Source of the DNA: Calcarisporiella thermophila CBS 279.70 | Taxonomy: Eukaryota > Fungi > Calcarisporiellomycota | DNA length: 64,000 nucleotides | NCBI RefSeq assembly: GCF_041956535.1 | Contig: NW_027192196.1 | Span: 204,921 to 268,920, forward strand | Direction: 5' to 3' | In this document: positions 21,234 through 28,100 of the stretch, piece by piece | Layout of the letters: each line of letters opens with the position of its first letter | Numbering within the stretch: position 1 is the first letter of the stretch | Notes under the pieces: model-generated | What the model was told of the DNA's origin: nothing | What the model saw: only the letters and a program-made list of their open reading frames with translations | The model's database searches: none | Position numbers and translations under genes: made by a program

Positions 21234-24200
21234 TCAGACTCTAGTAATTTTTTTTTTTTGAGCTTCAAGCGCCCGTTGATGCAGCGGTTCAGCTTGATCA
21301 TATTTTCCCTGGCATTTGTAGAGAGCAGCTAGATTGTTAAGAGTAGTTATTGTATCAGGATGATCAAGACCCAATATATTTTCAACGACCGCCAGTGCTC
21401 GTTGATAAAAAAGTTCAGCTTGATCATATTTGTTTTGACTTGAGTATAGTGCGGCTAGGTTGTTAAGAACGGCTGCAGTATCATGGTGCTTGGATCCCAA
21501 ACATTTCTCCACATTTTTTAGCGCTCTTTGATACAAAGGCTCAGCCAGCTCATATTTACCCTGATGTGTATAAAGCGCAGCTAGATTGTTAAGCGTGCAT
21601 GCAGTTTCAGGATGTTCGGATCCTAATTTCTTTTCTCGAATTGAGAGTGCTCTTTGATAAAGCGATTCGGCCTGCTCTTGCTTGCCCTGTTTTTCATAAA
21701 GTGTAGCCAAGTTGCAAAGTGTACTTGCGGTATCTGGATGCTCTGGTCCCAATGCTTTCTCGACAATCACCAGCGCTCGTTGACGTAGAGATTCGGCGCG
21801 CTCATACTTGCCCTGATCCGAATAGAGCGCAGCTAGGTTATATAGAGTGGTAGCGGTAGAAGAGTGCTCTGGTCCAAGCACCCTCTCAACAATTGCCAGC
21901 GCTCGTTGATACAACGACTCTGCCTTCTCAAGTTTGCCCTGAATACTGTAGAGGTGAGCTAGGCTGTCAAGGACAGTGGCAATAGAAGGGTGTTCTGATC
22001 CTAACTCTCTCTCCACAAATGTTAGCGCTTGTTGATGCAGCAACTCAGCCAGATCATATTTGCCCTTAATTCGGTAGAGTACAGCTAGATTGTTGAGAGT
22101 GATGGCGGTATCAGAATGCTCGGATCTCAGCCCATTCTGGAGGATTCTCAGTGACCGTCGAAACAGCATTTCAGCCTCCTCATATTTACCCTGATTTACA
22201 TATAGCGCAGCTAAATTATTAAGTGTGGTTGCAGTATCGTGGTGCGCTTCCCCCATCTCTTTCTCAATAATTTCTAGAGCATTTCGATGTAGCAATTCGG
22301 CCTGTTCGTATTTACCTTGACTTGAGTAAAACGCGGCTAGATTGTCAAGCGCGGTAGCAGTAGAAGGATGCCCAGGTCCCAATACTTTCTTTCGGATTGT
22401 CAGCGCCCTTTGATATAGTGTCTCGACCTGATCATATTTGTCTTGACTTGAATAGAGCATAGCTAGATTTTCAAGTACGGTAGCAGTAGTAGGATGCTCT
22501 GGTCCTAATTTTTCCTCAACTGTTGCTAAGGCATGTTGATAAAACGATTCGGCCTGTTTATATTTTCCCTGACTTGAGTAAAGTGTTGTCAGATTATCAA
22601 GTGTAGTTGCCGTATAAGAATCTTCTGGCCCCAACATCTTCTCAAAAATTGACAGTGCTCGTTCGTACAGCAATCTGGCTTGTTCAGATTTGCCCTGACT
22701 TTTGTAAACTAAAGCTAGATTGTTTAGGGTGGCTGCAGTATTGGGATGTTCAGATCCCAAAGTTTTCTCAACAATTGCAAGCGCTTGATGATACACCGAT
22801 TCAGCTTGCTCATACTTATCTGACCTCTCATAGAGTGCAGCTAAGCAATTAAGTGTACATGCAGTATCAGGATGCTCGAATTCTAACTTCTCTCGGATTG
22901 ACAGTGACTTTCGATACAATATTTCTGCCTCTTTATATTTATTTTGCATGGCGTATATATACCCTAGGGAATAATGCGAAAAAGCTGTATTAGAGTGCTC
23001 GCTTCCATACAGCGAGGTACATATTTTAAGTGAGAACTTTGCGAGTTTTTCAATATCAATTATTATCCCATTGATTGTTAAATATTTTAAGGCGAGAGCT
23101 GTCACATTGTATAAGGCATCTGATATAATTGAGCATGGATTCATGTCACCAAGCAACGCAACAAAATATCGGATATGCGCAATATAAGGTTGTATAATGG
23201 AATGAGCAACTGGATCATATAATTCGTATAACTCAGCGCTCAAAGTCTCACGTTCAAGCGCGTGTGCTATTTCCTTGGCCCAATCTACTTTATCTTCTAT
23301 ATTTATAGCATCGTAGATAACCTTCTGAACAAGTCTGTGAATCCGCACACTAGCAAATAATTTTTTTATGCCGTCTTCATCTAACAGAGTAGATATCAAG
23401 GAAACAAAGGAGAAGTTGATTAGAACTGATATCGCAGATTGCACTGCAGTTCTCGCGTCAGAAGCTTTCACCTCGAACTCTGTTGAAGCCTGCGGACTCG
23501 ACTCAGCTTTGAAAATAGAATAACAGTGCTCAAAGAGACGCGTAGGAATTTCATCCGAGTGAAGAAAGGCACATGCCTCCAGTACTCTTACTGAAATCGG
23601 ATTTTTCTTATTGAGTTGTTCAAGTGAAATAGCCCAGACCGTTTCAATTGTGTGTCTATAAGTGTTTGCGCTATCCTCATCATGATACGAATAAATTTCT
23701 TTTCGTTGTTTTTTGAACTTCACGAGATAGCCTTTAAAAGTATAGCGAGTTGTCTTCATATAAGCACGAGCAAGATCAATCGCAAGCGGCATACAATCAA
23801 GCTCAACAACTACTTTATGAGCATAGTGATACTGGATGCTTTGTGGATCCATTGTTTCTAACTCTTCTTGTAACAGTAGAGACATGGCCTCTTCTTCTGT
23901 CATCTTGCCTATTTCTATTATTTTTCCTCTCCGAGAAGATATATGCTCTCGTGTAGTTATGAGAATATGACCTCCTTTACTAGGCAATATGTCAAATATA
24001 TTCTCAGACACTTTCTCTCCCACATTATCCAATAAGAGCAGCCAGTTAGTGTTAGCTTCTAACCAACTTCGAACCCATTTGAAGACTGTGTCTTCTGCGT
24101 TTTTCTCCTTTAATAAAGCAGGGTCAATGCCAAGATTGATGGCCAGCTTTCGCAACGAATCAAATGTTATTGTCCAGTTTTCGGCATTTAGCCAGAAAAC

Positions 24201-24602
24201 GAACTCATATTCTTTGTTGTGGTAATAGCAGTATCGTAGCATCAATTGCGTTTTACCCATCCCACCAAGACCCTTGAGCACCACAATTTTGCGTCGGTGT
24301 GGTGAACTAGCCTCGCCGAGCAACTCCGATAGTTTATTGAAAATCTCTGGCCGCTCAATGAAAGTATTATTTTCATCCGGGACACCAAAGAATGTTTGAT
24401 CCACCTTGTGCTTTGGATAGGGGGCCAATAGCCCGGACCCTACCAGCCAAAATGGAAGACTTTTATTAGACGTTTATACTTCATATTCATATGTACGTCT
24501 TCATTTACCTGCTCCATAAATATATGTGACATTTCCGGAGTTAATGGATGCCCTATTCGAAGCGTTTATATATCCAGCAGTATTAGCGGTTTGCGAAAAC
24601 AT
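21234..24602 (-). CDS. Fungal NLR: N-terminal HET-s-like amyloid motif, NB-ARC domain, 14 TPRs (~1099 aa); exon 1 24602-24509, intron 24508-24440, exon 2 24439-21234
   Basis: P-loop GLGGMGKT, VFWLNA, Walker B WLLLLDNV, GHILITTR, CMPLAI (GLPL-like), IHRLVQ (MHD-like), 42-aa TPRs. The 69-nt GT..AG intron with CTAAT branch site links ATG 24602 in frame to ORF 21234..24428. Confidence 0.9.
21250..23006 (-). repeat. 14 tandem ~42-aa (126-nt) TPR repeats, kinesin-light-chain-like
   Basis: Consensus GxEHPxTAxTLNNLAxLYxxQGKYExAExLYQRALxIxEKxL counted 14 times in the translation. Confidence 0.93.
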
Positions 24603-24645: not shown

Positions 24646-25145
24646 ACGAATGTTATAATTCGGTTGTTAATTACAATTGTCGCAAAGAATTTTTCAAGCT
24701 TTTAAATAGAAGCACTTAAGCACATGGTTTATACTAATCTTATGCCCAACCTTAAGTAAAAACTCTACACATTTACCTTATTCGAAGTTTGAAAATAATG
24801 ACAGTGCCCAATGACCTTACCCTATCAAGTTAATATTTCTTATTCCAAGGTACTGAATTTATATTATACTTCACTGCCCCTCTCTTCAAGTTCACATTTC
24901 CTCTTACGAAACTTTGATGTGTGCATCCAATTCCCTTGAGAATACGTGAGAGTATGTTTACACATGAAAGAAAAATCTCCAGTGGACCTTATATTTTGTA
25001 GCACTAAAATGTAAAAAAAGCATATATTTGAGAACACATTAAAATACACAAAGAGGCTTTGCTGGGAATAATATATATCAGAATATTTATATCATTCTCA
25101 GAGATCGGATTTAAATTATATGCAATCATGCGAAAGAGATGGATA

Positions 25146-28100
25146 TCATGGATATTTGCGATAATAAATACGACGTATAAGCTTTTCTATCTCGCTAAAC
25201 ACGACCAGTATCCCGCAGCAAATCACAATTTTAGCCCATGCAAAGCCGGGGAGCGGGTTCATTTCGAGCCATTCCGCCCAAGGAGGAATGAGATTGCCCA
25301 TGATTAGGAGTGCGAACGATAATATAAGAGCATAGATCATCCAAACATTACTAAACGGGTTTGTGAGAAAGATGGATTCACGGACCGTGCGAGTTAGAGG
25401 TGCAAAAAGGAGCTGTAAGGTTGTCAAGCCCATAAAGGCCTGTAGATATGAGATTTAGATTAACAGGGTGTATAAAACCGAAAAGACATTATGGTTGCAT
25501 ACCAATGATTGAGCGTCCCTTAGCTGAATCCCTTCGACATACAATGCAATTAGGAATAGACCCATCGAGAGTCCTCCCATTAGAAACGCTTTTAGTAGTA
25601 AATTTAGAGAGCTACTGAGGGTTAATATTTTGCGCTGTGGATCACGCGGCTTGCGTTGCATGAGATCTATCTCTGCTGGTTCCATAGCAATAGCCATAGC
25701 AGGAGGAACATCGGCAATAATGTTGGCTAACAAGTAAAAAAAAAATTAAACTATTATCTAGGTTGCAATGAATCACTTGATCATTACCCCAAAGAATCAT
25801 AATTGGGGTGAAGGGCGTCGGGAGTCCTGCCACACTCGCCACCAACATGACAATTATCTCAGCGGTATTGCAGCTGAGCAAATATATGATAAATTTCATA
25901 ATATTATCGAACACTTTACGTCCCTCTTCAACACCTGCAACAATGGTTGTAAAATTATCGTCTGCAAGTACAATATCGGCCGCCTGCTTTGTAACTTCGG
26001 TTCCCCCGATACCCATGGCTACACCCACATCAGCTGCTTTTATAGCAGGGGCATCTATGTAGGGAGAAAAATCAGTCAGTATATATGAAAGGGGAAAATT
26101 GTTGACTCGTAAACTCGGTGATAATAAGAAATCGAGATGTATGAACAAATACCATTTACACCGTCACCCGTCATAGCTACTACGTCCTTTCGTTTTTTGA
26201 GAGCTTGTACAATTTTTAGTTTGTTATCAGGGCTAGCGTAACGAAATCAATTTAGTTAAATAGTGATTATTAGATGTATGTGATAAGAGGATCCTTACCT
26301 AACTCGGGCGAACACATTCGGGAAAGGAGTAAGTTCAGCAATTGCGTCATCTGAAAGAACATCGAGCTCCTGTCCACTGATTGCACGGTTCTAAATCGTA
26401 CCATCAGTTTTCAATTCAACATATTGCTAAAGAAAAAATGAGCTTACCATTCCACGAACATCTTTTTTCATGATCCCAAGTTTGTAAGCAATAGCGGTGG
26501 CGGTCACTACGTGATCACCGGTAATCATAACCACATGGATACCCGCTTCTTGACATTTTTTTATTGATTCGGCGACTCCGCTTCTGGGTGGATCGATGAG
26601 TCCAATTAGACCAACGAAAGTAAGCTCCTTTTCCGCATAAGGTGGCTCATTCGGGTCTATTTGACCATCGACACGAGGAATGCGTCGATATGCCAACCCA
26701 AGCACACGTAGACCTTTCGCAGCCATGACCGAGGCTTGATTGCTCACTAAATGTTCGAAATCATCATCCATTTCAACGGGTTTGGATTCCAGTTGAGTCC
26801 TAAGTGTGGTGGGTCTATCATCGGAGGAAGAGGTGCTAGTTGTCGGTAGATAGTTGACACATCTACGTAATAGTTGCTCTGGGGCACCTTTAGCAAGAAT
26901 TATGTCATGGTCGTATTCAGATGAGCCCTTTTTTTCCTCCTTTTCATCGCCGTTGATTCGCACGAGTACACTCATCACTTTCCTCTCGCTATCAAACGCC
27001 CGTTCGCTTAACCGCACAATTCCAAGCTGTCGCCACCACACTTTTGGAAAGCCCGCTTTTTGCGCTGCAACGATAAGCGCAACCTCAGTTGGATCGCCGA
27101 CCCCCTTCCAATTTTCAGTGCCTTCGGCTGCTTCGATGGAAGAGTTGTTGCAGAGACAAGATACCATTAGAGAAAGGAACAGGGTAGGTGATAACTTGGT
27201 GTAGTCGCCGCGAGGCACCACTTCATCCATCCTCTCTCCGATCGAGGGCGTTTCGTCTGCTGTAATATCAGTAGCCAGTGTAGAGAGCTTCTTACTCTCA
27301 TCAGCCTCTGTGGATTGGGTCGAACTTTCAACTAACGAATCGGATTGGGATGGACGACGCGCTGAGTTCTTATTTACATGAATTATTTCGCCTTTAGTAG
27401 GATTCAAAGAAGTGGACTCTGTAAGACTATAAATCGCATCATCAGATGTCCAAATTTCGCTAACGCCCATCTTTCCTTCCGTAAGTGTCCCTGTCTTTAA
27501 TTTTTTTAATTGGTTAAAATGAATTCAATCGCTTTTACATAAATTAATATATAAAATAATACCTTGTCTGAACATATAAAAGTAACGCTTCCAAGGGTTT
27601 CAACTGCGGGGAGAGTTCGGACAATGCATTTTCTAAGTATTTTAAATAGCGTATTAATTGAGTCGACGGTAAAATTTGGGATGTCTGATCTATTTTGGAG
27701 CTTATTAACTCAAATTATGCACCTTGCTGCCATTTGCTTTACACCAATTGCCATTGTAACAGTAACAACAGCGACCAGGCCCTCTGGAATAACGGATACT
27801 GCCAAACTTTTTACAAAAAATTATTAACTTACTATACCAAAAATAGAATACAAACGGCAGAATGGTGAGTAGATACCTGATTCCAATATTGACCATTTGA
27901 TTCGTATCCTTTTTGTACAGAACACCTGCTACAACCACAATTACACACAAAAGTATTGCCAATGCAACAAGCCACTTTCCAAGAGTGGCAAGTTTGCGTT
28001 GCATAGGAGTCTTTGTTTTTGATTGCGAAGAAATTGCCGCTGAGATTTTCCCGATCTAAAATTCAAGGAAAAAAGATTAATAATTTATAGCACATGCAGC

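What the first reader, a model, noticed from the sequence alone, without database searches (positions are those of the whole stretch)
24440..24602. Hidden first exon gives the NLR an N-terminal HET-s/NWD2-type amyloid signalling motif
Seen: the NB-ARC-TPR ORF begins at a TTG. An upstream ATG exon (24602-24509) splices in frame through a 69-nt GT..AG intron with a CTAAT branch site, and a TATTTAAAA lies ~100 nt upstream. This exon encodes only MFSQTANTAGYINASNRASINSGNVTYIYGA. Residues 7-25 (NTAGYINASNRASINSGNV) align without gaps to HET-s prion repeat R1 (NSAKDIRTEERARVQLGNV, recalled), with 8/19 identities including both ladder Asn, the inward A/I/A positions and the GN arc. They also resemble the NWD2 R0 motif. 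One deviation: Ser22 replaces the hydrophobic L/V before GN. Known: Dikarya NLRs with no effector domain and a short N-terminal amyloid motif template the fold onto a HeLo/HELL cell-death protein. Inference: this is an amyloid-signalling immune receptor in what appears to be an early-diverging fungus, where to my knowledge such systems are little described. The motif sits on its own exon, like a shuffleable module.
Basis: partly seen in the sequence, partly recalled or inferred. Interest (0 to 1): 0.92.

Follow-up and report, generated by a model that had tools for sequence, protein, structure and literature searches.

The report
Amyloid-like motif links NLRs to caspases
An immune-receptor gene of an early-diverging fungus starts with a tiny exon whose prion-like motif reappears on two caspase-like proteases and one phospholipase in the same genome, which suggests an inflammasome-like receptor-to-protease relay that I could not find described in any fungus; nothing is shown experimentally yet.

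Summary
The exon, intron and frame are real. The organism is Calcarisporiella thermophila (Mucoromycota), and NCBI already annotates this spliced NB-ARC-TPR protein (VTP21DRAFT_9796). Fourteen NLR loci in the genome carry a related first-exon motif; at least 11 have the same phase-1 intron. A profile of these exons finds three other carriers: the extreme C-termini of two intronless Peptidase_C14 caspase-like proteases and the N-terminal exon of a patatin. The single HeLo protein has no copy. This NLR's motif best matches caspase VTP21DRAFT_383 (10/22 identical, ungapped; 1 of 50,000 shuffles). Two motif subtypes lean towards different caspases. Endogonales caspases end in similar tails, one Jimgerdemannia NLR has the same exon design, and bacterial relatives carry EAD1/TIR adaptors in that tail position. 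The motif has the HRAM core pattern but matches no HET-s profile and lacks R/K15, so it is HRAM-like, not a HET-s member. Best reading: amyloid templating from NLR to caspase or patatin. Amyloid formation, expression and substrate are untested. The scan noted the same system earlier from other NLRs of this genome (s1-605894).

The parts
24700..24708 (-). TATA-like TATTTAAAA, 106 nt upstream of the ATG
   Evidence: Sequence; function untested
24509..24602 (-). Exon 1, 31 codons + 1 base, encoding only the motif region
   Evidence: NCBI model P0001 = VTP21DRAFT_9796; equivalent exon in paralogs
24528..24593 (-). Motif core, Gln4 to Val25 (HRAM positions 0-21), long subtype A
   Evidence: Alignments A1/A3; 10/22 identical to the C-terminus of caspase P0121; HRAM position table
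24440..24508 (-). 69-nt phase-1 GT..AG intron, CTAAT at 24469-24465
   Evidence: same phase and position in at least 10 paralogs and in Jimgerdemannia P0306
21234..24439 (-). Exon 2: short linker, NB-ARC, TPR array, stop
23697..24338 (-). NB-ARC domain (PF00931, E 3.7e-11, over cut-off); Walker A at 24272-24249
21288..22985 (-). TPR sensor array, about 14 TPR_10/TPR_12 repeats
25146..25400 (-). Context: last exon and stop of the upstream P-type ATPase; leaves 543 nt before the NLR ATG

Best explanation
The gene is a sensor NLR without an enzymatic or pore-forming N-terminal domain. On ligand binding by the TPR array the NB-ARC domain oligomerises (established NLR behaviour, inferred here) and brings the N-terminal motifs together, where they nucleate an HRAM-like beta-arch amyloid (inferred from the residue pattern). 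This seed recruits the matching, otherwise disordered motif of separate effector proteins, most likely the C-terminal tail of caspase-like protease VTP21DRAFT_383 and possibly the N-terminal motif of a patatin. Clustering on the fibril activates the protease by proximity (inferred by analogy with caspases and MALT1), giving a defence or cell-death output whose substrate is unknown. Shown by sequence: gene structure, motif family, the three effector carriers, intact catalytic residues, best-match pairing. Inferred: amyloid fold, physical interaction, activation, cell death.
For: A profile built only from 13 NLR exons, run on the 28-Mb genome, gives 14 NLR exons, a patatin first exon (E 3.6e-5), two caspase C-termini (E 0.0096, 0.081) and one noise hit at E 2.9; iteration adds nothing new (17 hits). 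Both proteases pass PF00656 and keep His/Cys. Profile-free: this exon against the P0121 tail scores 54, z 7.1, reached by 1 of 50,000 shuffles; 6 of the 10 identical residues use different codons. Six of seven subtype-A exons score clearly higher against caspase 383 than 327; subtype-B exons L015 and L016 clearly prefer 327 and all five B exons score low on the patatin; three motif-less control exons match nothing. AlphaFold2: confident caspase fold (nearest MALT1 and metacaspases) with an unstructured tail, pLDDT <50 over 303-351. Endogonales homologs end in an acidic linker and a Gly/Asn-rich beta-type tail with an invariant Gly; Jimgerdemannia NLR P0306 has a motif exon and phase-1 intron. 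Bacterial relatives hold EAD1 or TIR in the same C-terminal slot, and the EAD1-type tail is repeated in a neighbouring gene; EADs are proposed homotypic adaptors (PMC7159879). HRAM core positions are met: G19 15/16, hydrophobic 16 in 16/16, 8 in 14/16, 10 in 13/16, N/D20 13/16 (definition PMC4518210).
Against: No experiment and no RNA evidence. No profile match to any described amyloid motif. The effectors have one copy, not two, and are not next to a motif-bearing NLR: neighbours here are housekeeping genes, and the NLR 10 kb from caspase 383 has a different first exon. Subtype pairing is a trend on few sequences (L021 scores 44 v 45; L005, L022, L027 weak). The Jimgerdemannia NLR matches its own genome's caspase tail only weakly (z 2.5) and Calcarisporiella effectors better. 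Low pLDDT on a variable tail is expected for any poorly aligned region. No gasdermin was found, with an insensitive model.
Confidence: 0.66

Rival explanations
1. The motif is a homotypic adaptor between these NLRs and the caspases/patatin, but works as a short non-amyloid beta-strand docking peptide without self-propagating fibrils.
For: No match to any known amyloid-motif profile or structure; charged positions typical of HET-s are missing; single copy in effectors; bacterial relatives use folded adaptors in that slot.
Against: Length, Gly/Asn turns, alternating hydrophobics and the GN end follow the HRAM core; single-copy effector motifs and unlinked genes are reported for the PNP_UDP-associated HRAM variant and for BASS (PMC9815663).
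Confidence: 0.14
2. The motif is amyloid, but the true executioner is a HeLo/MLKL-type pore former; the caspases and patatin are side branches or decoys.
For: The genome has one HeLo gene (E 6e-52) and one MLKL_N match; a motif split by an intron could escape a six-frame search.
Against: Neither locus is hit by either profile; the HeLo protein has a long C-terminal region ending without the motif; no PF17111 or PF11558 match (the PF11558 control was silent).
Confidence: 0.07
3. The patatin, not the caspase, is this NLR's main effector.
For: The patatin is the best non-NLR profile hit (E 3.6e-5), matches subtype A throughout (z 4.8-9.4), has the same exon-1/GT design and intact DGGGxRG, GxSxG and DGG motifs; patatin is a known fungal NLR effector domain (PMC9815663).
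Against: For this NLR the caspase scores higher (54 v 40; 1 v 42 of 50,000 shuffles); described effector-side motifs are C-terminal (PMC12261475). The patatin could be a derived gene that captured an NLR first exon. Not exclusive with the best explanation.
Confidence: 0.09
4. The similarity is compositional (Asn/Gly/Ser-rich low complexity) or a relic with no signalling role.
For: Short, small-residue-rich sequences; several motif-bearing NLR loci are decaying (stops or frameshifts), and a third caspase paralog has a stop.
Against: Composition-preserving shuffles are exceeded; the hits fall at termini of two paralogous proteases and a lipase out of 28 Mb; synonymous divergence with residue conservation; the design recurs in Endogonales.
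Confidence: 0.04

Closest known systems
NWD2/HET-S and HRAM1-5 systems of Dikarya (PMC4518210)
   Same: Effector-less NLR with one short N-terminal motif; G19, hydrophobic 8/10/16, GN end; matching motif on a separate effector; coexisting motif subtypes.
   Different: No PF11558 or PDB match; R/K15 absent (0/16), Q at position 0 and G at 6 and 13 instead; effectors are Peptidase_C14 and patatin rather than HeLo/HELL; one copy, not two; genes unlinked; host is Mucoromycota.
PNP_UDP-associated HRAM variant NLR12, PUASM and the agaricomycete NLR05/22 motifs (PMC9815663)
   Same: Enzymatic effector, single effector-side copy, many NLRs per effector, genes not adjacent.
   Different: Different enzymes; that survey scanned 19 effector domains including CHAT and Patatin but not PF00656, looked at effector C-termini, and reports motifs from Asco- and Basidiomycota.
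Bacterial BASS motifs on CHAT, TIR2, hydrolase and cyclase effectors (bioRxiv 10.1101/2020.01.06.895854)
   Same: Amyloid motif at the C-terminus of a caspase-clan protease, paired with an NLR.
   Different: Bacterial, adjacent genes, CHAT rather than Peptidase_C14; similarity to individual BASS families not tested.
Bacterial caspase-EAD1/TIR proteins (PMC7159879)
   Same: Nearest sequence relatives of the fungal caspases (25-38% identity); adaptor in the same C-terminal slot.
   Different: Folded helical adaptor instead of a short beta-type motif.
Animal inflammasome and CBM/MALT1 signalosomes (own knowledge; contrast drawn in bioRxiv 10.1101/2021.06.03.446900)
   Same: NLR recruits a separate caspase-family protease through a homotypic polymer.
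   Different: Death-fold filaments there; that paper notes known fungal NLRs carry their protease in cis. Analogy only, no homology of the adaptor.

Membership tests
Fungal NLR (NB-ARC-TPR) | NB-ARC domain with P-loop followed by superstructure repeats | tested here: met
   PF00931 E 3.7e-11 over cut-off, Walker A intact, about 14 TPRs
HET-s PFD (PF11558 / HRAM1) | Profile match to HET-s 218-289 | tested here: not met
   No Pfam hit for any of 13 exons; no HET-s chain in PDB at E<=10; genome search blank but control silent
HRAM (broad) | Gly at position 19 | tested here: met
   This exon yes; 15/16
HRAM (broad) | Hydrophobic at 5, 8, 10, 16, 18 | tested here: inconclusive
   This exon 4 of 5 (Ser at 18); family 8, 14, 13, 16, 10 of 16, counting Ala as hydrophobic; the short subtype is out of register at 3 and 5
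HRAM (broad) | Asn, Gln or His at position 3 | tested here: inconclusive
   This exon and caspase 383 have Asn; family 6/16
HRAM (broad) | Preference for Arg/Lys at 15 | tested here: not met
   0/16
HRAM (broad) | Two repeats at the C-terminus of a HeLo/HeLo-like effector | tested here: not met
   Carriers are caspases and patatin with one copy
NLR amyloid signalling (general) | Same motif at an NLR N-terminus and at a terminus of a separate effector in the same genome | tested here: met
NLR amyloid signalling (general) | NLR and effector genes adjacent (usual, not universal) | tested here: not met
   Housekeeping neighbours in the window and around the effectors
NLR amyloid signalling (general) | Motif forms amyloid, propagates and cross-seeds the effector | not testable with these tools
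   Needs experiment
PP/RHIM, sigma, PUASM, BASS | Family consensus | tested here: inconclusive
   No NxGxQxGxN or FxGxGxQ pattern by inspection; PF17046 blank in genome; BASS profiles not available
Peptidase_C14 (effectors P0121, P0122) | Caspase fold with His-Cys dyad | tested here: met
   PF00656 E 4e-16 and 5e-12; H89 and C140 invariant in 30 homologs; fold matches MALT1/metacaspases

The most novel reading that the evidence does not exclude
Calcarisporiella and Endogonales run an amyloid-coupled 'inflammasome': many TPR/ankyrin NLRs converge through two or more motif subtypes on stand-alone caspase-like proteases of probable bacterial origin, in which a prion-type motif replaced the bacterial EAD1/TIR adaptor, with a patatin as a second output carrying the motif at its N-terminus.
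Probability: 0.5. Interest if true: 0.9.

Novelty: new variant of a known kind. Interest (0 to 1): 0.78.

Why it matters
In the papers I could read, fungal amyloid signalling is described from Asco- and Basidiomycota with HeLo/HELL, lipase or PNP_UDP effectors, and an early survey found no NLRs in Mucorales or chytrids (PMC4986451). A system in Mucoromycota would extend amyloid signalling beyond Dikarya, and a separate Peptidase_C14 effector would give fungi a receptor-adaptor-caspase logic like animal inflammasomes, built with a prion motif. It is directly testable with 22-residue peptides and named gene pairs, and the two subtypes predict a seeding barrier.

Tried and rejected
Exon alone against the genome: self only; the family profile was needed. 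Pfam, PDB and ESM Atlas gave nothing for the motif. HeLo gene L032: no motif; PF17111, PF11558, PF17046 and PF04598 blank in the genome, with weak or silent controls. No effector or gasdermin-like ORF recognised within about 10 kb of the caspases or patatin, by inspection of ORF ends only. Flanks of four Endogonales caspases held no NLR. In bacterial loci no short-motif caspase showed a matching neighbour motif. A large upstream effector exon is unlikely: 543 nt separate the ATPase stop from the ATG and paralogs share the M-x-x-Q start, but it is not excluded without reads. No RNA run was listed. One exception to flag: sent residues 1-45 of the database's own protein P0001, which cross the junction; it returned nothing and nothing rests on it. 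The HET-s R1 peptide has no reference here, so a shuffle test against it was left out. Four literature searches on this topic found no paper on Mucoromycota amyloid motifs or Peptidase_C14 as an amyloid-coupled fungal effector; the library lacks most subscription journals.

Full report
Observation. Exon 1 runs 24602-24509 (94 nt), a 69-nt GT..AG intron with CTAAT follows, and exon 2 (24439-21234) brings the total to 1099 codons plus stop. The best database hit is identical over the region searched: VTP21DRAFT_9796 of Calcarisporiella thermophila, 1099 aa, with this N-terminus. Exon 2 encodes NB-ARC and about 14 TPRs. The upstream P-type ATPase stops 543 nt before the ATG. No RNA run was listed. 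Searches were made exon by exon; the one use of the database's joined protein across the junction gave nothing.

A motif family. The genome has 35 NB-ARC matches at about 25 loci. Upstream of many of them lies a small ATG exon ending in G|GT; a phase-1 splice into the NB-ARC frame was found for 11. Thirteen exons align with an invariant Gln and a near-invariant Gly 19 residues later. A long subtype A (this gene, L003, L004, L006, L009, L012, L023) has the pattern Q-x5-G-x-[IV]-x-A-x2-G-x2-[IV]-N-x-G-N; subtype B (L015, L016, L021, L022, L027) is a residue shorter; L005 is intermediate. About eight loci have no such exon. On an NB-ARC tree subtype A falls in one moderately supported group, subtype B occurs on both sides of the deepest split, and motif-less genes are interspersed; this fits gain, loss or exchange of the exon but was not tested formally. 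Differences concentrate at third codon positions.

The partners. The profile, built from NLR exons only, was run on all six frames of the 28-Mb genome. Besides 14 NLR exons it found C16:694926 (E 3.6e-5), C1:901059 (E 0.0096), C1:766134 (E 0.081) and one noise hit. These are the first exon of a patatin with intact catalytic motifs and the last 35-45 residues of two intronless Peptidase_C14 genes, VTP21DRAFT_383 and _327. Adding them to the profile gave the same 17 places and nothing else. Without any profile, this window's exon aligns ungapped to the 383 tail with 10/22 identities (z 7.1; 1 of 50,000 shuffles), less well to the patatin (42 of 50,000) and poorly to 327 (1683 of 50,000). Subtype A generally prefers 383 and the patatin; subtype B leans to 327, clearly for two of five exons. 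The only HeLo protein is long and has no motif; no HeLo-like (PF17111) or PF11558 match exists. None of the effectors is adjacent to a motif-bearing NLR. Two ordinary intron-containing PF00656 genes elsewhere are not hit by the motif profile.

Beyond this genome. Homologous caspases in Jimgerdemannia, Endogone and unassigned assemblies keep His89/Cys140 and end in an acidic linker plus a diverse Gly/Asn-rich beta-type tail with one invariant Gly. Jimgerdemannia NLR P0306 begins with a motif exon and phase-1 intron and is picked up by a leave-one-out profile (E 0.009 among 411 proteins), in the same assembly as caspase P0123, though that pair scores only z 2.5. The fungal caspases form one clade (SH-aLRT 100) whose nearest relatives retrieved are bacterial; Mca1-type metacaspases were not in the tree, so a bacterial origin is an inference. 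In bacterial relatives the same tail position holds EAD1 or TIR, and the EAD1-type tail recurs at the end of a neighbouring gene, the pattern from which EADs were proposed as homotypic adaptors (PMC7159879). AlphaFold2 gives 383 a confident caspase fold closest to MALT1 and metacaspases and an unstructured tail.

Mechanism. Most likely the activated NLR oligomer nucleates a beta-arch amyloid from its N-terminal motif and templates it onto the caspase tail, clustering and activating the protease; the patatin may be a parallel output. Gene structure, motif sharing and catalytic integrity are shown; amyloid, binding, activation and cell death are inferred. I put a homotypic adaptor role at about 0.9 counting all partner options, and the full amyloid-to-caspase model at about 0.66.

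Comparison. Against the HRAM definition (PMC4518210) this exon meets N3, hydrophobic 5/8/10/16 and G19, and misses hydrophobic 18 and R/K15; the family never has R/K15. It matches no Pfam or PDB entry. It should be called HRAM-like, not HET-s. Single effector-side copies, enzymatic effectors and unlinked genes have precedent in the PNP_UDP-associated HRAM variant (PMC9815663); an amyloid motif on a caspase-clan CHAT protease has precedent in bacteria (bioRxiv 2020.01.06.895854). I found no report of such motifs in Mucoromycota, of Peptidase_C14 as a fungal amyloid-coupled effector, or of an effector-side motif at an N-terminus.

Earlier notes of the scan. Several first-stage notes describe the same exon on other NLRs of this genome, and one follow-up (s1-605894) reports the same two caspases and patatin. 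I saw that follow-up, after finding the carriers; it uses the same genome and is not independent evidence.

Verdict. Real feature, new variant of a known kind; interest 0.78.

Noticed in passing
L032:1003-2169 (-), G000 C38:7175-7831: The genome's only HeLo protein, with a long uncharacterised C-terminal region and no motif.
   Followed up: partly
G000 C6:81777-82094 (+): MLKL_N (PF22215) match over cut-off in a 627-aa open frame, on the same contig as this window; not read.
   Followed up: no
L060 (G000 C39:19131-20138 +): Third paralog of the motif-bearing caspases, with one in-frame TGA and a short divergent tail that the profile does not hit.
   Followed up: partly
L008 (G000 C1:524197-524274 -): Motif exon with an internal TGA; the NCBI model VTP21DRAFT_239 fuses this NLR to an upstream Fungal_trans gene, probably a mis-annotation.
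   Followed up: partly
P0253 / L161: Jimgerdemannia model with Zn2Cys6 cluster, then a motif-like stretch in its own exon, then NB-ARC; the stretch resembles Endogone caspase tail P0129 (z 3.6).
   Followed up: partly
P0124 C-terminus: Jimgerdemannia caspase tail followed by several extra Asn/Gly-rich pentapeptide-like repeats.
   Followed up: no
L071:about 2780-2920 (+): Metagenomic fungal NLR with an uncalled upstream exon carrying a motif-like stretch.
   Followed up: partly
L066:10001-15156: Blastocatellia operon: kinase-ankyrin, caspase with a short RHIM-like tail, unknown 347-aa protein, ParA-like/TIR/WD40 protein; no matching motif found in neighbours.
   Followed up: partly
window 3281-5782 (+): 833-aa single-ORF glyoxal/galactose oxidase-like protein with FG-GAP and tectonin repeats.
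   Followed up: no
L010, L014, L018 first exons: Other NLRs also have a small first exon, but with unrelated sequences that match none of the three effectors; possible further motif types.
   Followed up: partly
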